From contig JAWQFM010000030.1 in NCBI GenBank assembly GCA_033442325.1, positions 1-33,200 on the forward strand: a DNA stretch of 33,200 bases, written 5' to 3'. The notes under the pieces were generated by a model that was not told where the DNA came from, did no database searches, and worked only from the letters and a program-made list of their open reading frames with translations. This stretch comes from Salpingoeca rosetta (lineage: Eukaryota; Protista; Choanoflagellata). A program made the position numbers and the translations under genes. Positions 5,801 to 17,780 of this stretch are shown one piece after another. How positions within the stretch are numbered: position 1 is the first letter of the stretch; each line of letters begins with the position of its first letter.

Positions 5801-6262
5801 CTGTCATCACAGCTTGAGCAGGACGTCGAGCAGCTCCTGAAGGTCGTGGACGTGTGAGACAGCTCATGAGCGGTGGGCAGCAGTAGAAGGTACAGGAACA
5901 GAAGAAGAGAAGACAACAACAAAAAGCGAGCAAGCGGCCAACATTGACGCGTGTGAACAGCTCCACGCACGCCTTCCGATGATAAACTTACGAGTCGCAT
6001 CCAGAGTCGCAATAGTAATCGCAGCTGGCAAAGAGAAGGAGGTAAAGCAGGAAGAAAACAGGCAACAGAGCATTCGAGAGGCAACAGGTGAACAGTGTGA
6101 GATCACGCACGTGTTGGGTTGCGTTGCAAGCTCAAACAGGACTTATGCTAGCATGGTGCACAAGCTCTGTGTGTGTGTAATTTGGAACGGACGAAGACGA
6201 GCTTCCTTACCCGTAATCGCAGCCAGCGTTGCAGTCGTCATCACAAAAGTCGTCACAACCAC
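1..6262 (-). CDS. Large extracellular cysteine-rich repeat protein: C-x3-C Asp-rich N-terminal region, TNFR-like/ephrin-receptor-like Cys repeats and a Sushi/CCP domain. First exon not found; the 3' end runs out of the window
   Basis: Fourteen phase-compatible GT-AG exons: 6262-6211, 6024-5992, 5836-5760, 5593-5516, 5387-5316, 5106-5060, 4929-4896, 4730-4719, 4550-4523, 4330-4311, 4135-3832, 3689-2933, 2680-360, 162-<1. Junctions read through, e.g. CSSG/TYKL, AAGFT/EDVAPT and CTCAPG/YIREGC. Repeats are CxxxTxCxxxEYExxAPTxTSDRxC. The last exon reads CEPPPVIDG...YACVPGYLLH, which is Sushi-like. Confidence 0.85.
360..2680 (-). CDS. Largest exon of the Cys-rich gene; tandem TNFR-like 'T-x-T-S-D-R-x-C' repeats
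   Basis: ORF 356-2647, bounded by acceptor GTAG at 2684-2681 and donor GTGAGT at 359-354. Confidence 0.9.
438..865 (-). repeat. Coding tandem repeat: four near-identical 72-nt units and two 75-nt units
   Basis: The 72-nt units encode SKLTTCTSSQYEKTAAT[AS]TSDR[VM]C and the 75-nt units encode ...TTCDGESEFESRAPTLTSDR[VM]C. GCGGTCGCTCGTC recurs at 443, 515 and onward with a period of 72. Confidence 0.9.
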
Positions 6263-7048
6263 CTGCGTCATGTGGCACAATAACAGCCAAACAGCGCGAC
6301 TCCTTTTGAGGGCTATGACACACCCAGAGAGGAGACGATAGAGTGGGAGGCAAAGGAAACAAGGACATCATATCTCTACAGTCTGTCAGCAAACCCATCT
6401 GCGACAGTGCGTGCGTCGTGGTTGACAGTCTTTCAGAACAGGCGTCCCCATCAGCCACAGAGAGAGCGTGACTCGAGCAGGGGACGGAGACAAGAGGAGA
6501 GGACAAGCCACGGTGAACCGCACACGCAGACGTGGGTGTGTGTGTGTGTGTGTTTGCATGAATCTGTGATCGAACACGTGTGCATTGCATATGCGTGATT
6601 ACGAAAACTGCAAATCAACGCTGCTGGTTTCTTCGGAGCGGACAAGCAGTCACAAATCACACCGTACCAATGAAACATTGCATTGAAGTATTGAACTGCC
6701 CGTAGTTCTTTCGTTCTCTTGTCTGCAGCAACAGCAACGTGAGGTGAGTAACGGTTGGCGATGGATGACCACGCTCTCCCTTTCACACGTGCCCAGCTCC
6801 AAGGCAGATTTGACTTTGGGATTGAGCGATCCGTTTGCCCATCTTTGTGACGCATGCGCCTAAATTTTCGCGCCATTGGTCCTCCTCTCAGTCTCTATTT
6901 TCTTGTCGACCACAAACCACGCCACTTTCTACCTTCCGTTTCGCTTGTTCGCTTGTTTGCCGTGCTTAGTGTCAGGCTGACGCTGTTGTTGTGGAGCTGT
7001 GTAGAGAGAAGTCTTGAACTGGAACCATGCCCCACCATGTCTGTCGCA

Positions 7049-8436
7049 AGTGTGGCCGTGAAGTGAAGCACAAGCACAGGAGTGCGCAAGACAGCAGCAT
7101 CCAGCCATCGTCACACAGGAGGACGACACGCATCATGATACGCAGCAAGCTGACTCTGACACATGGCTCTCGTGAATACGTCTTCGTTGCTTGCACTGTT
7201 GGCGTGTTTGGTTCTTCCTCTTCTTGATGGAGTGGCCTGTGATGATGGCGATTAGCCCTTCAGGCTGCTTGAGTTGTTGAATTGCACACGAGTGGCGAAG
7301 ACCTTGGTCGTTTGGTCGCTATCTCTAGCGTCTCTCCTTCTCTGTTGGGTGTCTTGTCGACGTGTCATAAACGAATAAACACCATTATCTCGTTAGGGGA
7401 ATCAGTTCAGTTACAGAACGGGCGTTATTCGTTTGGGAGTCAGTGCCAGCACACACAACACACGCGTGCATTGAAGAAGTGTGGGCAAAGAAGAGGGATG
7501 GTGCACGCTGTCTGGACGTTGAACTGCATGCAGTCGACACAAGATGCCGGGTGGTCAACGTAAAGGCCTGTGTGAGTGTGTGGGTCTACTCCACTCGGCA
7601 GTCGCGGTGGAACAAAGGAAACAGAAGATACACGAAGCACGCGTACAAAGGTCGATGCAATCGTTCGACACTCACCACATGAGGTTCATCAAAGGAGGCA
7701 GAAATCCGCACACACTAAAGGTAAGGACACAGACAGATGGACAGTGCGAAGACCAGTGTGGCCGTGAAGTGAAGCACAAGCACAGGAGTGCTCACGACAG
7801 CAGCATCCAGCCATCGTCACACAGGAGGACGACACGCATCATGATACGCAGCAAGCTGACTCTGACACATGGCTCTCGTGAATACGTCTTCGTTGCTTGC
7901 ACTGTTGGCGTGTTTGGTTCTTCCTCTTCTTGATGGAGTGGCCTGTGATGATGGCGATTAGCCCTTCAGGCTGCTTGAGTTGTTGAATTGCACATGTGTG
8001 GCGAAGACCTTGGTCGTTTGGTCGCTATCTCTAGCGTCTCTCCTTCTCTGTTGGGTGTCTTGTCGACGTGTCATAAACGAAAAAACACCATTGTCTCGTC
8101 AGGGGAATCAGTTCAGTTACAGAACGGGCGTTGTTTGTTTGGGAGTCAGTGCCAGCACACACAACACACGCGTGCATTGAAGAAGTGTGAGCAAAGAAGA
8201 GGGATGGTGCACGCTGTCTGGACGTTGAATTGCATGCAGTCGACACAAGATGCCGGGTGGTCAACGTAAAGGCCTGTGTGGGTCTACTCTACTCAGCAGT
8301 CGAGGTAGAACAAAGGAAACAGAAGATACACGAAGCACGCAAACAAAGGTCGATGCAATCGTTCGACACTCACCACATGAGGTTCATCAAAGGAGGCAGA
8401 AATCCGCACACACCAAAGGTAAGAAGGACACAGACA
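7049..8436. repeat. Near-tandem direct duplication of ~690 bp (copy 1 ~7049-7737, copy 2 ~7755-8436)
   Basis: Both copies start AGTGTGGCCGTGAAGTGAAGCAC (7049 and 7755; offset 706). Parallel ORFs occur at 7282 and 7988. The copies differ by scattered substitutions and an 8-nt indel. Confidence 0.92.
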
Positions 8437-8899
8437 CAGACACACACACAGACAGACACACACACACACAGAAGTGCACCATGAAGTAATTGCTCACCCT
8501 CCTCTGTCTTTCATGCACATAGATCCACTTGTTTTGTTGCTGACAGCTCCAGCTGAAACCTCTGCGCATTCGCCATGCACGCAGACACATCCTTTGACAA
8601 ACCAACAAACCAGTCTTGAATATGGCGCGTTTAACACGTTCGGCACATCGATACGCAAGCAATAAGCTTGCCGGCCTGCGGTCCTGTCGACCAATGCTGT
8701 CCACACCCTTGCCCATGAGTGAGGCATTTGGACACAGAGACAGGAGTGGAGAGAGGACAGTGGCGACGCAGCCGAATGCAAATGCAAACACAGAGAGGCA
8801 CACAGAGAGGCGCTGAGACACTGAAGCGAACACACACACACACACACACTCTCTCTCTCTCTCTCTCTTTTTATGCTAGCACAAGCATACCCTCCCTCC

Positions 8900-9773
8900 G
8901 TCCTTCTTCTCCTCTGCCTCACTTTGGGCGACGTCGACACATCAACGAACATACACCTCCATGAAGGCGCCATTCGAAGCACTGCCGAGAAAGCCAAGCG
9001 CAGACTGCTCTGCGTTGGCGGATGTACGCAAGGGCCCAAGCGACCCAGTTTCGCCCAATGGACGGCGGGCGTTGTGACCAAAACTCCACGCGAAGCCGCA
9101 TGTGCTTTTGCCATACGTCGAGTCGGAGCCGTGCCATCAACACGTCTTCGTCGCATCGGCTTCCTTTGGCGGACACGTTGCAGCTTCAGACAGCCGGTGC
9201 TGCACGGCACCGGGACGCCTGAGAAGAGGGCTTGAAGGGAATCGCTGGCCAGCGCACCTTCGTACGGGATCCACTCTTCCGTGTTGGAGACAAACAGCAC
9301 GTCCACTGCCTTTGGAAACCACGCGTTTCCTTTGAAGTCGTTCTGGCATTCTGCTGTTCAAACGAGTTCTTGGTTTGACCACAGGTTGCAGCGATTCAAT
9401 GTCCATGTATTGGTGCCGTCGTTTGAGAAGCGAGCGGCGAGCGTCCACGGGTGTGCACTTTCACCTGCGATCTCCACTTTGCATTTCGTCGTCGCCAAAA
9501 ACGTCTGCAATGCCCGAGTCTACGTCGCACCTGAGCGAATTCCCGTTGAGCAAGTCTTTCATGCTGGCGATCTCGTCCTGAAGCCTTGCAACGGTGTTGT
9601 GCAAGCCTTGCACGTCGACGCCGTTCGGGGTCTGTGGTGTTAATTACCAGCCTGCCGGAATCCTCTTCTTTGAGGACAGCGCCCAACACCGCAGTCGGAT
9701 GCGGTGCCAAGCACTGAAGCAGCAGAGCCGCTGCCAAGTAGGAGTGTGAAAGGAACAGCGTCCACTCTTCCAC
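8900..9773 (-). pseudogene. Disrupted secreted protein: signal peptide, GxLxINTxDP/NGVDV module, coiled coil and fibrinogen/intelectin-like domain. 3' boundary approximate
   Basis: Three frames join: MEEWTLFLSHSYLAAALLLQCLA...SGRLVINTTDP | NGVDVQGLHNTVARLQDEIASMKDLL...C (from 9625) | KCKVEIAGESAHPWTLAARFSNDGTNTW...LWSNQELV*TAECQNDFKGNAW...DVLFV. There is an in-frame TGA at 9360-9358. Confidence 0.65.
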
Positions 9774-10724
9774 CGCCTTTGCTGCGAAAACATTGTCAGT
9801 TCTGTTCTTGTTGCGTTGTTGAGGTACACGAGGGAGGACGGTGTTTAGGTGTTTGGTCTTTCTGCTTGTGTTCGCTCGCGCTCACGCAAACTTTGTTCTT
9901 GCTTGCAGACTCGCAGAGCTGGGGGGGGGGGGGCTGGTCTTTGAGTGAGTGAGACTTGATGTCAAGAAAGAAGAAAAGCAAACCATCTTCAGCAAATGGG
10001 AGAGTGGCCGGAAAGTGGAGATGCTGAAAGACTGAAAGAGATGCTCAGGGTGTTTGTTCACCCTCGCCACATCAGCGAGCTAAAGAGAGAGCTCTAAAGC
10101 TGTCTCACTCACGCGAGAAGGCCACGAATTCGCGAACAGTACAACAACTCGAACAAGCAGAACGAGGCGAAGAACGAGGCGAACGAAGCAAACCCCATTG
10201 ACCCGTTCGTTCGCTGTCCCACCCGCCGAGCGCACCGTTGTCTCATCTCCGCCTTTGTTCGATCCATCCAATGGGGACAAACCGGGACAGCCTTGTGGGC
10301 TTGCTCACGATACACGGGAAATTTTCTCCCACTTCGTTTGTGCGATTGTTGCCCAGCGTCCACACCTTGACTTTCAGGCCTTTTGTGCTTGTGCGTTGTT
10401 TCGCTTGTTGCCCCCCCCCCACCTCACCTGAGGCTTTCCCCTCAGCCACTCTCTTCCCACATTGCTCCCTTCTTCTCCTTCCTTTCATTTCTTCCTCTGA
10501 GCCGACTGCAACTGCAACGAAGCAGCAACTTCCGTCTCTTTGCGTTCCTGTCGCACAATTTGCCAGAGCAAGCCTTCATTCACCCCTCCACCCTGCAGCT
10601 ACTCCTGAGCACCTCCCCGGCGGCTTGACCTGTTGGCTGACGCTAGGACAGAAGACTGCACTGCACACCCACACACACACACACACGCACACACACACAC
10701 ACATCTGAAAACAACGACGACGAG

Positions 10725-11623
10725 ATGCCATCCTCCTCCGTGCTCAGGACCGTGGCCATTATGGCGGCGATTGTCCTTGTGACGGCGACGGGCGGCTTCC
10801 AGGGCGTGCTTGGTTCCTGCCATGGGCAGGAGGAAGCTGAGGGCTCATGCAGCGCAATTTACCGCCAGTGTTCCGCCGCATCCCTCGCCCAAGTGTGCGG
10901 ACACAGCGATGACGACCTACCGCTGAGCTTTGGTCACTCATTTTGTCAAAGGTTTGAGCGCGGATTCAACGACTTCACTGGGCGTGGCCGGCGGTGGGTG
11001 CGATCCACAAAGAAGTGCTTGCAGGGCAAACTGGATGCCTATTTCCGCTCAAACCCAAACAGCCGTTGCCGCACATTGAGCGCGACAGAGTTGAGTCGCA
11101 CCTGTCATGCTACACACAGGCATCAAAGAACGCCTGCAACCTCCGTCGGAGTGACAGGCAGCTGATCTTCGACATCGTGAGGAACGCGTACAATGAATTC
11201 CAGACGACCTCCACGATTCGTCAAGGTCTGCAAACGGCGTTCAGTTGCCTCGGGTCCTTCGGAGCACCCAACAACAGGCATCAGCAAGTCAAGCCTCTGT
11301 ACGGGGCTGCGGGACTTCTTCAACAACTGATTGATGCCTTGACTCGACGGTCAGTACCGTCCATCTCTGCTTCGATGGCCAAGTCTGTGGAACAGCAGCT
11401 GGCTCAGCAGCTGGGCATCACGCCTGAAAGCATTCACATCACCGTGAAAACCATGGGTACCGCCACCAACATCTTCAGCGACCTTGCCAGCAACATGACG
11501 AACGCAAACGCCACAGCACGCGCCCAGGATGCTGATGACTCTGGGCCCCACTTTGCGGTTGTCATTGACATCTCCGATGCGCAAGGGCATGCGGACAGGT
11601 TGGCAGCGCGGGCGACTGCGCTC
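10725..11623 (+). pseudogene. Secreted stanniocalcin-like protein with a 1-nt frameshift near 11070-11075 (pseudogene or sequence error); runs into a gap
   Basis: Signal peptide MPSSSVLRTVAIMAAIVLVTATGG. Cys pattern C..C..CG..FGHSFCQRF..FTGRGRRWVRSTKKCLQGKL..C continues in the other frame as IERDRVESHLSCY..ACNL. A SEA-like segment LAQQLGITPESIHITV follows. Confidence 0.65.
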
Positions 11624-11723
11624 NNNNNNNNNNNNNNNNNNNNNNNNNNNNNNNNNNNNNNNNNNNNNNNNNNNNNNNNNNNNNNNNNNNNNNNNNNNNN
11701 NNNNNNNNNNNNNNNNNNNNNNN

Positions 11724-11778
<55 letters not shown>

Positions 11779-11836
11779 GTGTGTGTGTGTGCGCGCGCGT
11801 GTTCATGTGTGTGTGTGTGTGTGTGCCATTGCTTAC

Positions 11837-12805
11837 AACAAGTGGCACGCTCGCTGGTATCTAACCTGACAAGGGCGCGGTCACTGGCTGTTGCTGTGGC
11901 TGTTGCTGTTGTTGTTGTTGCTGTTGTTGTTGCATCTGTTGTTGCTGGAACTGGTGTTGCGCCATGGACACAAACGTGGTCGACGGCATCATAGTTGGCG
12001 CCCAGCATGCTGCTGGCATTGCCTGTGACGACCAGACGGCGACAGGGGTTGGTTGTTTGAGGGTGAGCATGGTGTGAATGGTGAGGGCCACACGTGACGT
12101 TCAAGTGGTCGCACAGCACATGGTTGAGGGACAACACATGGTTGAGGCACAGCACGTGGTTGGGGTGGTGGTAGGAAGGCCGGCATGAAAGACAACAAAA
12201 CCAAGAAGCGAGGTCAAACCAAGCACAAAACAACAACGCTGTCAACTCACTTGGGAGACAGGGAAGTAGAAAGGAGCTTGCGGCATGAACCACGACCCGA
12301 CTGGCGGTGCGGCGGTTGTGGTTGTGGCGGGAAAGGAGGCGACGGTCGCCTCATGTGGCGACTGCCGCTGCTGCTGTTGGTGCTGCTGCTGTTGGTGCAG
12401 GTGGTGGTGCTGTTGCTTGGAGGAGGAGGACGCGTCGTCAGAGTCAGAGTGGGACATTTGCGAGGACGTGTTGACGGCGTGGCACAGGTGCTGCATGAGC
12501 GCGTGGGAGCCGTGCGCGGCGTCGTCCTGTGGGGTGGGCGCTGCCTTCGCCATGGGCGCTGGGTGGCCGAATGGCGGGGCGAGTTGGGGAGCCATGTTGG
12601 CGGCGGTGGCCAGGGCCATGAGGGGCTGGAACTGCGGGTGCATGTTGGGCATGAACATGGCCTGGTGTTGCGGCAGCTGGTGTTGCTGCGGCTGCGGCTG
12701 CGGCTGCTGCTGCATTGGTGGCGCTTGCGGTTGAGCGTACTGCGCAAAGGCCGGGTGGTGGGCCAAGGGAGCATATGTCGACATGGTGTCCTGGGGACCG
12801 CCCAT
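11837..12805 (-). CDS. Low-complexity Gln/His/Pro-rich protein, multi-exon and possibly degenerate; function unknown
   Basis: ATG at 12805 (MGGPQDTMSTYAPLAHH...). Exon 12805-12251 ends at a GTGAGT donor. Putative exon 12180-12115 follows. The exon from 12022 (AMPAACWAPTMM...polyQ) reaches TAG at 11863-11861, then a GTAAGC donor at 11836. Confidence 0.5.
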
Positions 12806-13697
12806 GTTGGAAGAAAGGGGGGGGGGGGAGGGCGGGTGGGTGGTGGAAAGGGAGGACAGAAGACGAAGGACGCGGGTTGATGAGAAGGGCGATAATGGGA
12901 AACGGATGCTGAGAGGGGAAGGGCGTTGACGGGGAACGGATACACGGAAGTCGGGAGGGAGTGCTGGTGGGGCGGTCGTCAGAGGGTCTTGGAAGAAAGG
13001 GCGCGTGAGATGAAAATGAAAATGAACCAGGAGAGGGCAGAACAATGGGGGTGGGGAGGCAACGACAAAACAAAAGAAACAAGGGAAGGGAGTGTGGAGA
13101 TGGACAGGCGCACGATGAGAGAAGGAGAGAACAACGGCAGAAGACAGCAGCAGCACCCTCGTGGTGATGTGATGTCAAAGGTATGCGATGACGACAGAAA
13201 TGAGTTTAAGGGGTACCGTGCACCCAAACAATTGAAGGAGGTGCGTGGCTGAATGCAGAACGATCGGGAGAAGGAAAGGAAAGGAAAGGAAGGAACGTGG
13301 GGGGGGGTGGACGAAGAGGAGAAGGAGGGAGAAGGCGGTAAGGGTAGTGCGGTCGGTGAAGGGGGCGGTCAGAAGCGTGAATGACGAAAGGACAGATGCA
13401 GCGAAGACAGCAACACGACCGACGCAGGACGCATGCTCGTGTGCGTGGTGTGGCGTGGCGTTCGTGTGTGTGGTTGCGGTGGTTGCGGTCGGAACGCAAC
13501 AACGGCATCCCTATCGTTTTAAATGGGATTGACGAAATCGCCGAAAGATAGCTGATGATATTAGACAATAATCGGCATCGCCACACGACAACGCTGCCTC
13601 GAACCAAGCAAAAGGTTTAGCTTTGGCGCTCTGGTGATGTCATTTTCTGGGAAAAGAGTTGACGCAAGTGTCGCAATGGGAACGGTGTTGCGTGGTT

Positions 13698-13701
<4 letters not shown>

Positions 13702-13775
<74 letters not shown>

Positions 13776-13859
13776 TGTGTGTGTGTGTGTGTGGTTGTGT
13801 GTGTGTGTGGTTGTGTGTGGTTGTGTGTGTGTCTGTTTATGTGTGTGTCTGTATCTGTA

Positions 13860-13897
<38 letters not shown>

Positions 13898-13935
13898 TGT
13901 GTGTGCATGTGTGTTGTGTTGTGTGTTGTGTGTTG
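13702..13935. repeat. (TG)n microsatellite-rich tract
   Basis: Long interrupted TG runs, seen directly. Confidence 0.9.
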
Positions 13936-14311
13936 CGTGAATGCTCATCACGTCATGCGAGTTCTCGGAACTGTGATGTGATGATGTGACACCAACCACA
14001 ACGACAACAAAATGATGTCAGCCACCACGGACGTCACATGACGGGAGGAACAAGAGGACTGTTCATGACGCTCTACACAATGTCACGCGGAGGAACAGAG
14101 AGTGCGTGCGTTCTATGATGAATCCTGGCAAGAGGAAGACGGTGAGGGGAAGAGAGCGAGAGGCATCGAGGGAAAGGACACTGGGTACAACGCACAGAGA
14201 GAGAGACCGAGAGAGAGAGAGAGAGAGTGAGTGAGTGAGTGAGAAAGACTGATAGACTGAGACAGAGAGTGTACAAACGCTCGTACACACACACACACAG
14301 AGCACACAAAT

Positions 14312-14346
<35 letters not shown>

Positions 14347-14423
14347 CCCCCCCCCCACACACACACACACAGCACACAGAAGTCCCCCCCCCTCCTCCCG
14401 CCCAACACTCACACACATCCCCG

Positions 14424-16001
14424 CTAGCTGGTGTGGTTGATGGGACATGATTGCACTTTGATGATGGATTCGCTGGTGGTGCCGCTGGTCTCGTTGCTGT
14501 ACGCGTCGCTCGCCTGAACGTTCCTCACGGCCTCCTCAATCGTGCGCCCGCCGAGCCGTGCGTCGCTCTTGTGCATGTACAGCGGCGTCGGCGTGCACGC
14601 ATGCAGGCTCGACAGCACCCGCTTGAAGCACTGGCGCTCGGCGTACAGACGCCGCTGCAGCGCAAACTTCATCAACGCGTGCGTGTACAGCTCGTGGTCG
14701 AGCGAGTTGCGCTGCCGCAGCACCCTCACCGCCTCCTCCCTTTCGGCAGCGGCAACGGCCGCGGCATCGTCAGCACGACCGCCATCGCCACGTCTGGGTG
14801 CTGCCACTGCCGCTGCTGCCGCCGCCGCGGCCGCGTGGTGATGCACACCCAAAGAATCACCAACACCACGGCCGCCATCCCCAACATCCCCCGTGCCACC
14901 ACGGCTGCCTGTGTGCTGCTGTGTGTGCGTGTGCGGGTTCCAGTTGGAGCAGAGGTTGATGTGCTGCAGCTGCCGGCCCACCTTCTCCTCCAGCCAGCAG
15001 TTGAGGATGGCCAAGCTCTCGTTGTAGCGGTCCGCAAGCAGCACCACGTCCAGTGCCGACAGCATGTCCAGCCCAACCCGCAGCACGCGCGAGCGCTCCT
15101 CCTCGTCCAGCGTGCCGAGCGGGCGGTACGTGTCGCTCAGGTGCTGGAGCTGGTAGTTCATGGCCATCTCGGTCGAGGTTGAGGTGGCAAACTGGTGCAG
15201 CGTCATGTTCCCAGCCGCCAGGTCGCGCACCGCGTCCCCACACACGTGCACGTGGCCCACATACGCGCACCCCTTGACCACCTTCTTCTTGTGGATGTCG
15301 CTGCTCCGGCCCAGGCTCGTGCTGAACGCGGAGAGCACGCGCGCCGTCGGCTCCCGCAAAATCGTCGTCAGCAGCTGCACGTCCTTCGGGCGCTCCTGCT
15401 TGGCCTCCTCGTACATCTTGCGCACGTGCCAGGCCTTGGAGTGCCCCCGCGTCACCGCCGACAGCACATCGGCCAGCGGCTGCGGCAGGCGCCTGCTGAA
15501 CTTGGGCCGCATCCCGTTGCTCGAGAACGTGCACCGAATCGTGCGCCCACCGGCCTTGCGCAGGTGAATCAGAAACACGTCAACCCGCGGCAGCGACGCG
15601 TCCAGCTCGTTCTGGCGCACTTTCGGCGCAATGGCATCCAGGAAACCCATGGTCGTCGCTGCCGCCGTCGACGTTGACGTCGTCTCTGCTGCTGGTGCAC
15701 CGCCCCTGCCACCTCCGTGCAAACCGTCCTTTATGCCTTCTATGCTGCTGATGGTGTTGGCGGCAGCGTTGGCGCCGCCGTTGTCGTCGTCGTCGTCGTC
15801 TTCATAATCGCCGTCGGCGGGATCATCGTCGTCATCTGCCACAATCGACAACAGAGACCTTCGGTGCTGTGGCTGTGGTTGCTGTTGTTGTAGTTGTTGC
15901 TGTGTGGGTGCTGGCGCGCATGACGTAAGCGCTTGAAGTGAAAACAGCACGAGGAGGAGGAAGAGGATATGGCAGCGGAGAGGTCGGTGTTCCCGCCGCA
16001 T
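14424..16001 (-). CDS. Golgi-type PAPS-dependent sulfotransferase (Gal-3-O-ST / Sulfotransfer_2-like), single exon, 525 aa
   Basis: N-terminal hydrophobic segment ILFLLLVLFSLQALTSC and an acidic stem. 5'-PSB-like FLIHLRKAGGRTI, 3'-PB-like TILREPTARVLSAF and C-terminal NSLDHELY are present. Confidence 0.85.
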   Translation of the reverse strand: MRREHRPLRCHILFLLLVLFSLQALTSCAPAPTQQQLQQQQPQPQHRRSLLSIVADDDDDPADGDYEDDDDDDNGGANAAANTISSIEGIKDGLHGGGRGGAPAAETTSTSTAAATTMGFLDAIAPKVRQNELDASLPRVDVFLIHLRKAGGRTIRCTFSSNGMRPKFSRRLPQPLADVLSAVTRGHSKAWHVRKMYEEAKQERPKDVQLLTTILREPTARVLSAFSTSLGRSSDIHKKKVVKGCAYVGHVHVCGDAVRDLAAGNMTLHQFATSTSTEMAMNYQLQHLSDTYRPLGTLDEEERSRVLRVGLDMLSALDVVLLADRYNESLAILNCWLEEKVGRQLQHINLCSNWNPHTHTQQHTGSRGGTGDVGDGGRGVGDSLGVHHHAAAAAAAAAVAAPRRGDGGRADDAAAVAAAEREEAVRVLRQRNSLDHELYTHALMKFALQRRLYAERQCFKRVLSSLHACTPTPLYMHKSDARLGGRTIEEAVRNVQASDAYSNETSGTTSESIIKVQSCPINHTS

Positions 16002-16246
16002 GGTAGGTGTGTGTGTGCGTGTGTGTGTGTGTGTGTGTGTGCGTGTGTGTGTGTGTGTGTGTGTCGTGTGTGTGTGTGTGTNNNNNNNNNNNNNNNNNNN
16101 NNNNNNNNNNNNNNNNNNNNNNNNNNNNNNNNNNNNNNNNNNNNNNNNNNNNNNNNNNNNNNNNNNNNNNNNNNNNNNNNNGACATTGTGGGGGGTAGGG
16201 TAATATGTCGACGGCCTTAATCAATGTGATCATTGGGCCAGTTGGG

Positions 16247-16297
<51 letters not shown>

Positions 16298-16488
16298 TGT
16301 TTGTGTGTGTGTGTGTGAGCGACAGCCCTCCTTCGTTTCAGGCACCAAAAAAGAGCGCAAGTTGGGAAAAGTAGCAATAATTTCCATTGGAAATCTCGAG
16401 CCTCCAACGACAAGACAACACAAACAAGCAAGCAAGCACCCCCCCCCCCCCTCCTCTCTCTGTGTCACTCTCGCTTCACTTCTCTTTG

Positions 16489-17780
16489 ATGGCGCCGTGC
16501 ATGTCGCTGGCGGCCCTGGCCTCCTGGCGGTGCTGGTGCTGATTTGTGGTGTGGGGAGTGAGGTGGCCATTGACAGCGATGAGCGCGGGGCACTGCACAT
16601 CAACACGAGCGACCCTGTACGTGCGCCCGTGCTATTCAACGGGGTGGATGTGTGGGAATTGTCTCGGTGGGTGCAGGCGCAAGCAGCGGCGCTGTCAACG
16701 CAGGTAGCAGCGCTGTCAACACAAACGAAGCAGCTTCAGGCACAACAAAGCACCACCGCAGCGCTTAGCGCGAAGCTGGACCAGCTGGAAGCGGTCACCT
16801 GTTCCAAGATTGACCCATCCACGGATACAACCATGCTCACGGACATTGGCACTGAGGGGAGTGCGGACTGGCGTGCCGCCGTCCTGGCCAGCAACGGCCT
16901 CATCTACTGCATTCCTCACAACGCAGCATCCGTGCTCATCATCGACCCTGACACGAACACTGCTGACACAACAACCATTGCCGGCCTTGAGCTGGGCGGC
17001 GGCAAATGGAATGGCGGGGTTCACGCAAGCAACGGCCTCATCTACGGGATACCCGGGAATCGCGAGCAAGTGCTCATCATCGACCCCGCCGCAAACTTGA
17101 CAGACACCACCAGCATCACTGGCCTGCCATCCACCTCGCAGAAATGGTTCGGCGCCGTACAGGCGCACAACGGCCTCATCTACGGCATCCCCTGGGCTGC
17201 GTCTTCCGTGCTCGTCCTGGATCCAGTAACCAACTCCACAGACACAACCAGCATGGCCGGCTTTGATGAAGTCGGGGGCAAGTGGTACGATGGTGTGCTC
17301 GCAAACAGCGGGCTCATCTACTGCACCCCACGTGACTCGGCAGCTGTGCTCATCATCGACCCGACCACGAACACGGCCGATGTGACGTCCATCTCGGGCC
17401 TGCACGGCCCAGCCAAGTGGCAAGGCAGCGTGCTTGCAGCCAACGGTCTCATCTACGGCATTCCACGCGCAGCATCATCCGTGCTTATTGTTGACCCGGC
17501 TACAAACACGGCCGACACGACCTCCATCAGTGGCCTCGCCAGCGACCCGAACAAGTGGGTTGGCGGGGTACTGGCGCCAGATGGGCGGATCTTTGGCGTC
17601 CCATTCTCTGCCGCTGCTGTGCTCATCATCGACCCTGCCACCAGCTCATTTGACGTGTCCTCGCTGCCTGTGTCTGATGACATCGCCAAGTGGTACTCTG
17701 GCGTGCTTGCCGACAATGGCCTCATCTATGGCGTCCCGTTCTTCTCGAACTCTGCCTTGATCATCCATCCAGGCTGTTGA
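16489..17780 (+). CDS. Secreted 7-bladed beta-propeller protein with an N-terminal GxLxINTxDP/NGVDV module and coiled coil; apparent 1-nt frameshift in the signal peptide
   Basis: Seven ~46-aa repeats KW.G.VLA.NGLIYGIP..A..VLIIDP.T...DTT. ATG at 16489 gives MAPCMSLAALA, one base out of frame with LLAVLVLICGVGS (from 16521). Stop at 17778-17780. Confidence 0.8.

What the first reader, a model, noticed from the sequence alone, without database searches (positions are those of the whole stretch)
9500..16810. Shared N-terminal module 'GxLxINTxDP-x7-NGVDV + coiled coil + Cys' fused to different C-terminal domains
The gene at 16.5 kb reads signal-SEVAIDSDERGALHINTSDPVRAPVLFNGVDVWELSRW-coiled coil-C-beta-propeller. 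The unrelated minus-strand gene at 9.7 kb reads signal-GAVLKEEDSGRLVINTTDP/NGVDVQGLHNTVARLQDEIASMKDLL-C-fibrinogen-like. In the second gene a ~20-nt deletion removes the spacer and shifts the frame. A conserved base with swappable head domains suggests a modular secreted family, logically like collectins/ficolins or phage tail fibres with an oligomerising neck and variable binding head. I cannot assign the module to a named domain.
Basis: partly seen in the sequence, partly recalled or inferred. Interest (0 to 1): 0.78.

Follow-up and report, generated by a model that had tools for sequence, protein, structure and literature searches.

The report
Shared stalk cap on swappable heads
In the choanoflagellate Salpingoeca rosetta, more than 150 secreted proteins start with the same short module and a helical stalk but end in different binding heads; this window holds one nearly intact member and one dead copy.

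Summary
The window is Salpingoeca rosetta DNA.

- **Plus-strand gene (16489-17780).** It encodes a signal-like stretch, a 31-residue module (consensus EVVLxEDDxGALHINTSDPxxQPVFVNGVDV), a 53-residue helix and a seven-bladed propeller (AlphaFold pLDDT 94). Its only upstream ATG is one base out of frame.
- **Minus-strand "gene" (8942-9793).** This is a pseudogene. The 20-nt deletion, an in-frame TGA and other lesions are shared with two near-identical copies elsewhere. Five intact paralogues carry the same module on a fibrinogen-like head.
- **How common the module is.** A profile of it hits at least 150 places in this genome and 98 cluster representatives in 1.8 billion proteins. These include Monosiga brevicollis and Microstomoeca roanoka.
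- **Heads.** DUF6923-type propeller, fibrinogen-like, Kelch, SBBP, PQQ-like, FG-GAP, Receptor L, TNFR-Cys and mucin-like.
- **Known domains.** No Pfam or PDB sequence match to the module.

It most likely caps a parallel, probably trimeric, coiled-coil stalk that displays the heads. Oligomerisation is inferred, not shown.

This scan noted the same family before on other DNA (s1-444831, s1-435998, s1-432599). Both assembly gaps lie outside the two genes.

The parts
16489..16491 (+). Only upstream ATG of the plus gene. It is one base out of frame with the main open frame, and its own frame stops at 16540-16542.
   Evidence: Direct reading. All but one of the other sampled paralogues have an in-frame Met 35-80 residues before the module. 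Either a real frameshift or a homopolymer assembly error somewhere in 16489-16520.
16509..16559 (+). Hydrophobic signal-peptide-like stretch in the main frame (GGPGLLAVLVLICGVGS).
   Evidence: It sits where the paralogues have their signal peptides.
16560..16652 (+). N-terminal module (EVAIDSDERGALHINTSDPVRAPVLFNGVDV), with an NTS sequon at 16602-16610.
   Evidence: Profile A2 scores it E 2.6e-18. AlphaFold models strands at residues 4-7 and 13-16 and bridges at 26-31, with pLDDT 77-83.
16650..16808 (+). Coiled-coil stalk, a single helix over residues 32-84 of the mature protein.
   Evidence: AlphaFold helix 32-84. Heptads with V/L at position a and L/Q at position d.
16800..16802 (+). First Cys (Cys82), invariant in alignment A3. 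Probable partner of the C-terminal Cys.
   Evidence: Invariant C82 and nearly invariant C407. Both flank strands of the closing blade in the model. The disulfide is an inference.
16809..17780 (+). Seven-bladed beta-propeller head (NGLIYGIP...VLIIDPxTNTxDTT repeats), C-terminal Cys at 17775-17777, stop at 17778-17780.
   Evidence: AlphaFold pLDDT 94-98 with 7 x 4 strands. Foldseek best hits are virginiamycin B lyase and the BT4663 sensor propellers at about 10% identity. Relatives carry DUF6923 (PF21959).
8942..9793 (-). Pseudogene (relic) of the fibrinogen-like-head class, running from its out-of-frame ATG (9793-9791) to the stop after ...MEVYVR (8944-8942).
   Evidence: Three-frame reading. 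Intact paralogues L034-L038. Lesions shared with two other copies.
9627..9683 (-). First half of the relic's N-module (GAVLKEEDSGRLVINTTDP).
   Evidence: Matches the class consensus GEAVLEEDDxGRLIINTTDP.
9626..9626 (-). Junction left by the 20-nt deletion of the spacer (SQPVLV in intact paralogues); it shifts the frame.
   Evidence: The junction is identical in all three relic copies.
9527..9625 (-). Second half of the relic's module (NGVDV), a short coil and the first Cys of the head (9529-9527).
9358..9360 (-). In-frame TGA inside the relic's head domain.
   Evidence: Present in all three copies.
11624..11723 (.). Assembly gap, outside both genes, flanked by GT microsatellite.
16082..16181 (.). 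Assembly gap 308 nt upstream of the plus gene's ATG. An in-frame stop just before 16230 lies between it and the coding frame.

Best explanation
The shared element is a real, undescribed N-terminal domain of choanoflagellate secreted proteins.

Layout (shown): directly after the signal peptide comes a module of about 31 residues. AlphaFold models it as a beta-hairpin plus two short strands, with a conserved N-x-S/T glycosylation sequon in the connecting loop. The module runs straight into a heptad coiled coil of variable length, which carries a globular head.

Mechanism (inferred): the module caps and sets the register of a parallel coiled-coil stalk, most likely three-stranded. Several copies of one head are then displayed together for multivalent binding. 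Heads have been exchanged many times in evolution.

In this window: the plus gene is a propeller-headed member whose 5' end has a one-base frame problem. The minus-strand locus is a dead member of the small fibrinogen-like-head class, and it was copied twice after it died.
For: Shown:
- At least 150 profile hits in the genome, 47 of them on the 2.5-Mb contig C4.
- In about 70 sampled members the module always lies 35-80 residues after an in-frame Met and a hydrophobic leader, and a coil follows it.
- 98 representatives at E<=1e-3 in 1.84 billion proteins. They include S. rosetta PTSG_10030 (TNFR-Cys head), PTSG_04970 (PQQ-like), Monosiga brevicollis MONBRDRAFT_30356 (Receptor L head) and Microstomoeca roanoka proteins.
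- Pfam table of heads.
- Five intact module-plus-fibrinogen-like paralogues.
- AlphaFold model of the window protein: pLDDT 94.3, module strands at pLDDT 77-83, helix 32-84, seven blades.

Support for a coiled coil fixed at both ends:
- The distance from module to first Cys is 7n or 7n+4 in 57 of 62 members.
- Anchored at the module end, position a is 79% LIVMF, position d is 41% Gln and 26% Leu, and positions b, c and f are polar.

Support for a structural unit rather than a leader peptide: module-plus-short-coil units occur two or three times in tandem in MONBRDRAFT_30356, L074, P0026 and P0033.

Sequon: present in 71 of 74 members. It is kept, though displaced, in divergent members.
Against: - No oligomer was modelled or measured, and the monomer model cannot show strand exchange.
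- A Gln-rich d layer only suggests a trimer; that reading rests on my knowledge of coiled-coil statistics.
- The paralogues are related, so the spacing statistic overstates independence. Counting distinct lengths instead, 14 of 19 still fall in the two phases.
- The plus gene may itself be non-functional, and no full-length annotated protein for it appeared in the word search.
- No expression or secretion data were available.
- What the heads bind is unknown.
Confidence: 0.65

Rival explanations
1. Anchor module. The N-terminal beta segment of three chains interlocks, as in animal cubilin, and docks onto a membrane partner (amnionless-like or other). The many heads would then be tethered to the cell surface rather than free. 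This is compatible with the stalk reading but adds a docking function.
For: The layout matches the solved cubilin N-terminus: an N-terminal hairpin, an intertwined three-chain beta-helix and a trimeric coiled coil (PMC6283879, read). An earlier scan note raised this lead (s1-444831). The Pfam Amnionless family gives one weak match in the genome at C4:287518-287889 (E 0.0045, 20.3 bits), 12 kb from a module gene.
Against: Profiles of the module (A2), of the full propeller proteins (A3) and of all hits (A4) find no cubilin chain in the PDB sequences at E<=10. The Amnionless match is below the curated cut-off (30.4 bits). It covers only model positions 295-422, which I take, from my own knowledge of the protein, not from a test, to lie outside the beta-helix that binds cubilin. 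Papers naming both amnionless and choanoflagellates: none found.
Confidence: 0.15
2. Propeptide or sorting signal. The acidic module directs the proteins to a compartment (for example the secretory route, food vacuole or extracellular matrix) or is removed on maturation, and has no role in assembly.
For: It always sits immediately after the signal peptide, has an acidic EEDD stretch and carries a conserved glycosylation sequon.
Against: The module recurs internally, between coil segments, in several proteins. It is in fixed heptad phase with the coil. It is modelled as structured and continuous with the helix. No conserved dibasic or other cleavage motif follows it.
Confidence: 0.1
3. No function of its own. 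The common 5' end reflects recent duplication and gene conversion within one genome, and the other heads were joined by accidental recombination.
For: The genes are strongly clustered (47 of 150 on one contig), and many are close paralogues.
Against: The module is conserved across three named choanoflagellate species and in many environmental sequences, on unrelated heads. D, G, N and NG positions are nearly invariant while the signal peptides and coils diverge freely.
Confidence: 0.05

Closest known systems
Collectins and ficolins (animal soluble pattern-recognition lectins)
   Same: Secreted proteins. An N-terminal assembly region and a helical or rod-like stalk carry a C-terminal recognition head. 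One head class here is fibrinogen-like, as in ficolins. The logic is multivalent display.
   Different: No collagen Gly-X-Y region and no Cys in the N-terminal segment. The stalk is a pure heptad coil. Most heads are beta-propellers. There is no sequence relationship, and the fibrinogen-like head fails Pfam PF00147.
Cubilin N-terminal region in the cubam receptor (PDB structure described in PMC6283879)
   Same: The order is signal peptide, N-terminal hairpin with short beta strands, then a coiled coil that carries ligand-binding domains. In cubilin the beta part interlocks three chains.
   Different: No detectable sequence similarity. The module here is shorter. No clear amnionless partner was found. 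Trimer and interlocking are not shown here.
Fibres that alternate short beta segments with trimeric coiled coils: trimeric autotransporter adhesin stalks with necks, reovirus sigma-1, phage tail fibres
   Same: Short beta segments alternate with coiled-coil segments and end in a binding head. Tandem module-coil units occur in MONBRDRAFT_30356, L074 and P0026. There are weak structure-level look-alikes among small phage proteins.
   Different: This is only an analogy from my own knowledge. The Atlas matches are short (43-48 residues, TM 0.55-0.58) and carry no weight. There are no sequence matches.
DUF6923 (PF21959) beta-propeller proteins of bacteria
   Same: The propeller head of the window's plus gene is 40-55% identical to bacterial proteins (Leptospiraceae, Spirochaetaceae, Geoalkalibacter, Pseudorhodoplanes) over about 75% of its length, meaning the propeller only.
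   Different: The bacterial proteins lack the N-module and coil (query coverage 74-79%). Full-length matches are choanoflagellate or unnamed environmental sequences.

Membership tests
Any described domain for the N-module (Pfam-A, PDB sequences) | Significant profile match of the module to a curated family or to a solved chain | tested here: not met
   Seventy module sequences scanned against Pfam at E<=10 gave only scattered single noise hits. Whole proteins gave nothing over the N-terminus. The best PDB profile-search E-value was 0.39.
Fibrinogen C-terminal domain (PF00147), head of the relic and its paralogues | Match to the Pfam model | tested here: not met
   No Pfam hit for PTSG_09705, PTSG_09713, PTSG_03109 or P0004, even at E<=10.
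Fibrinogen C-terminal domain (PF00147), head of the relic and its paralogues | Fibrinogen-related fold | tested here: inconclusive
   The ESM Atlas model of PTSG_09705 residues 88-292 aligns at TM 0.60-0.71 to clusters carrying PF00147. UniRef names PTSG_09713 a fibrinogen C-terminal domain protein. My own AlphaFold run failed (pLDDT 30, four sequences).
DUF6923-type seven-bladed propeller, head of the plus gene | Match to PF21959 and a seven-bladed fold | tested here: inconclusive
   The window protein itself has no Pfam hit at E<=0.1. Thirteen family members and many relatives carry PF21959, often just under the cut-off. The seven-bladed fold is modelled at pLDDT 94.
Cubilin-type N-terminal trimerisation and docking region | Sequence similarity to the cubilin N-terminus | tested here: not met
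   No cubilin chain at E<=10 with profiles A2, A3 or A4.
Cubilin-type N-terminal trimerisation and docking region | Three chains interlocked in one beta-helix followed by a trimeric coil | not testable with these tools
   Only monomer prediction was available.
Cubilin-type N-terminal trimerisation and docking region | An amnionless-type membrane partner in the genome | tested here: inconclusive
   One sub-threshold match to PF14828 (20.3 bits against a cut-off of 30.4) at C4:287518-287889. The locus was not read.
Collectin / ficolin | Collagen-like Gly-X-Y stalk and Cys-rich N-terminal segment | tested here: not met
   The stalks are heptad coils without Gly-X-Y, and the module has no Cys.

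The most novel reading that the evidence does not exclude
The module is a pre-animal counterpart of the cubilin N-terminus. Three chains would interlock through it and dock onto a common membrane anchor, so that one anchoring device displays a repertoire of more than 150 different recognition heads on the choanoflagellate surface. Many of those heads are built on a propeller shared with bacteria. The cubam anchoring principle, and a large innate recognition repertoire, would then predate animals.
Probability: 0.1. Interest if true: 0.85.

Novelty: new variant of a known kind. Interest (0 to 1): 0.62.

Why it matters
Choanoflagellates are the closest living relatives of animals. They eat bacteria and respond to bacterial cues. 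I estimate a gene family of more than 150 members to be over 1% of the S. rosetta genes (an estimate from my own knowledge of the gene count, not measured here). A family that puts interchangeable binding heads on one conserved stalk looks like a secreted or surface recognition repertoire, built on the same logic as animal collectins, ficolins and cubilin but from different parts.

The module is absent from Pfam and from the papers I could search, so it defines a new domain family. It also gives a handle for finding all such proteins in other choanoflagellates and in environmental data.

The two window loci themselves are ordinary members, one possibly defective and one dead.

Tried and rejected
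1. Introns as the cause of the frame changes in the minus-strand locus: rejected. Intact paralogues are single open frames. The junction leaves no room for an intron. The same lesions plus private indels occur in two other copies whose flanks also align over more than 2 kb.
2. Gaps interrupting the genes: rejected.
3. AlphaFold of the fibrinogen-like class with four sequences: failed at pLDDT 30 and was not used.
4. Pfam on the fibrinogen-like proteins: nothing. Two of the three references had wrong minus-strand coordinates; the proteins were rescanned correctly.
5. PDB sequence searches with four profiles: no meaningful hit.
6. ESM Atlas on the module alone: only short, weak phage-protein look-alikes.
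7. Literature: no paper names these PTSG genes or DUF6923, links amnionless to choanoflagellates, or links choanoflagellates to fibrinogen-related coiled-coil proteins. One broad search returned an unrelated review.
8. Profile hits made only of the (V/I)F(V/I)NGV core, repeated several times (P0037, P0054, P0064, P0068, P0070, P0093, P0094): set aside as probable false positives. P0093 matches the bacterial PEGA domain in Pfam, and P0068 reads like one.
9. Long annotated proteins with an internal module (P0015, P0021, P0085, P0086): probably fused gene models. P0086 shows a second signal peptide before the module, and P0085 has an unrelated IDO domain upstream.
I did not try to obtain them another way. 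The unusual frames therefore remain unread: C4:1617674 (1626 aa), C4:1709582 (653 aa), four copies of 204-216 aa, and others.
Full report
**Organism and setting.** The window is rich in GT microsatellites and has about 56% G+C. Earlier notes of this scan name the genome Salpingoeca rosetta. I confirmed this: paralogues fetched from the same assembly are 100% identical to NCBI proteins such as PTSG_09705. The window is contig C30:1-33200 of assembly G000.

**The gaps.** Both gaps (11624-11723 and 16082-16181) lie in microsatellite DNA between genes. The plus gene's open frame is closed by a stop just before 16230, downstream of the second gap. The relic ends at 9793, 1.8 kb from the first gap. 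Neither gap bears on the finding. The stated span also covers unrelated DNA, for example a 525-aa minus-strand ORF at 14424-16001.

**The plus gene.**
- The main frame reads a hydrophobic leader (16509-16559), the module (16560-16652), a heptad helix, Cys (16800-16802) and seven repeats of about 46 residues, ending ...HPGC (stop 17778-17780).
- AlphaFold with 63 family sequences gives pLDDT 94.3. Strands fall at residues 4-7 and 13-16 with short bridges at 26-31 (pLDDT 77-83). One helix spans 32-84. The propeller has seven four-stranded blades, and the strand just after the helix completes the last blade.
- Cys82 is invariant and the C-terminal Cys407 is nearly so. Both adjoin that closing blade, so I infer a disulfide clasp of the propeller. 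The Cys therefore belongs to the head.
- Foldseek finds only generic seven-bladed propellers, such as virginiamycin B lyase and the BT4663 sensor, at about 10% identity.
- The only upstream ATG (16489) is one base out of frame and its frame stops at 16540. All but one of the other sampled paralogues have an in-frame Met. This is either a real frameshift or a homopolymer error in a GC-rich stretch.
- No full-length product of this gene appeared in the word search. This suggests annotators did not call it.

**The minus-strand locus.**
- Reading three frames gives an ATG at 9793 in one frame and a leader with the first module half in a second frame. One stray base follows at 9626. NGVDV, a short coil and Cys are in a third frame. 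There is another shift near 9490-9500, an in-frame TGA at 9360-9358, further indels near 9176, and the end ...MEVYVR at 8942.
- Two other loci (C31:510k and C19:907k) are 90-98% identical at the protein level over the head pieces searched. They share the 20-nt deletion and the TGA, carry private indels of their own, and align through the flanks for more than 2 kb.
- It is therefore a pseudogene that was duplicated after it died.
- Five paralogues with long open frames (four of them full-length; L035 breaks off inside the head) read signal peptide, GEAVLEEDDxGRLIINTTDPSQPVLVNGVDV, short coil, Cys and a head of about 200 residues ending FVELYVR. These include PTSG_09705, PTSG_09713 and PTSG_03109.
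- That head has no Pfam match, and my AlphaFold run failed. The ESM Atlas model aligns at TM 0.60-0.71 to clusters carrying Fibrinogen_C, and UniRef names one member accordingly. It is a probable divergent fibrinogen-related domain.

**How widespread the module is.**
- The 42-aa query finds 131 places in the genome.
- A 43-position profile of 70 modules (A2) finds 150 scored matches out of 182 candidates. Of these, 47 are on contig C4 and 19 on C25.
- In about 70 members that I could read, the layout is constant. There is a Met, a leader, the module 35-80 residues from the Met, a coil, and a head.
- Most heads are the propeller. Five are fibrinogen-like. One (L056, identical to P0006) has a Ser/Thr-rich mucin-like tail. 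One (L074) has two modules in tandem. Several short frames are frameshifted propellers (L067, L018, L077).

**Outside this genome.** The same profile, run against 1.84 billion representatives, gives 98 proteins at E<=1e-3. Named sources are S. rosetta, Monosiga brevicollis (MONBRDRAFT_30356) and Microstomoeca roanoka. The rest are unnamed environmental assemblies.

**Heads by Pfam.**
- DUF6923/DUF5074-type propeller
- SBBP
- Kelch
- PQQ-like
- FG-GAP
- Receptor L domain
- TNFR cysteine-rich
- Several heads have no match.

All of these show signal peptide, module, coil, head. MONBRDRAFT_30356, P0026 and P0033 have two or three module-coil units in series.

**What the module looks like.**
- The consensus is (G)EVVLxEDDxGA(L/F)HINT(S/T)DPxxQPVFVNG(V/M)(D/N)V.
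- Across all 93 proteins of alignment A4, which includes the non-S. rosetta hits, the nearly invariant positions are D, G and the NG pair. Within the 70 S. rosetta modules of A2, T18, N29 and G30 are invariant, and D9, G12, H15, N17, P21, V26 and V33 are 90% or more conserved.
- An N-x-S/T sequon sits at the HINTS position in 71 of 74 members. In divergent members it is displaced but kept (NQT, NSS, NIS). I infer selection for an N-glycan in that loop.

**Evidence for a coiled coil locked at both ends.**
- The distance from the module to the first Cys is 7n or 7n+4 in 57 of 62 members. Counted as distinct lengths, 14 of 19 fall in those two phases.
- With the last module residue taken as position a, a is 79% V/L/I/M/F, d is 41% Gln and 26% Leu, and b, c and f are polar.
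- From general knowledge of coiled coils, aliphatic a with a Gln-rich d layer fits trimers better than dimers. This remains an inference.

**Comparison with known systems.**
- No Pfam family and no solved chain matches the module by sequence.
- The working logic is that of collectins and ficolins, but without collagen or N-terminal Cys.
- The closest structural analogy is the cubilin N-terminus. It has a hairpin, a beta-helix interlocking three chains and a trimeric coil, and it docks on amnionless (PMC6283879). An earlier scan note raised this lead.
- I found no sequence support for that kinship. The only sign of amnionless is a sub-threshold match in the genome. The kinship stays undemonstrated.
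- The propeller head is 40-55% identical to bacterial DUF6923 proteins that lack the module.

**Verdict.**
- The module is a real, undescribed domain family of choanoflagellates.
- Its role as an oligomerising cap is the best-supported mechanism, but it is unproven.
- The two window loci are one possibly defective member and one dead member.
- The same family was already noted by this scan on other DNA (s1-444831, s1-435998, s1-432599).

**Limits.**
- No multimer modelling, expression data or glycosylation data were available.

Noticed in passing
window 8300-10300 (minus strand); L032 (C31:509188-512313); L033 (C19:905907-909032): The dead fibrinogen-like gene and more than 2 kb of its flanks exist in three copies on three contigs, with shared and private lesions. 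This is a dispersed segmental duplication or a repeat element of unknown extent.
   Followed up: partly
L084 (JGI metagenome 3300042365, contig Ga0453947_0000021, 87.5 kb), gene at 6001-7050: A module-plus-Kelch protein (P0053) lies on a long environmental contig. The contig has closely packed genes in which the gene caller's table shows no splits. They include a ribonucleotide reductase small subunit, several TPR proteins and a 2285-aa TNFR/ephrin-receptor-like protein. It could be a compact protist genome or a giant virus of choanoflagellates.
   Followed up: no
window 16809-17777 and relatives: The propeller head is 40-55% identical to proteins of Leptospiraceae, Spirochaetaceae, Geoalkalibacter and Pseudorhodoplanes (DUF6923). 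Gene transfer between bacteria and choanoflagellates is possible, with the direction untested.
   Followed up: no
G000:C4:287518-287889 (minus strand): Single weak match to the Pfam Amnionless family (E 0.0045, below cut-off), 12 kb from a module gene at C4:299873. The sequence was not read.
   Followed up: no
window 14424-16001 (minus strand): A 525-aa open frame with a signal or anchor-like N-terminus, an acidic stretch and a motif resembling the PAPS-binding loop of Golgi sulfotransferases (HLRKAGGRT). No Pfam hit at E<=0.1.
   Followed up: no
G000:C4:1617674-1617802 (plus strand) and C15:1042136, C17:261968, C4:939531, C1:3077736: One strong module hit opens a 1626-aa frame. Four near-identical hits open frames of only 204-216 aa. 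These may be further head classes or a repeated relic. They could not be fetched.
   Followed up: no
P0015, P0021, P0085, P0086 (the last two are PTSG_13026 and PTSG_08527): Annotated or predicted proteins with the module in the middle look like two neighbouring genes fused by gene prediction. In PTSG_08527 a second signal peptide precedes the internal module.
   Followed up: partly
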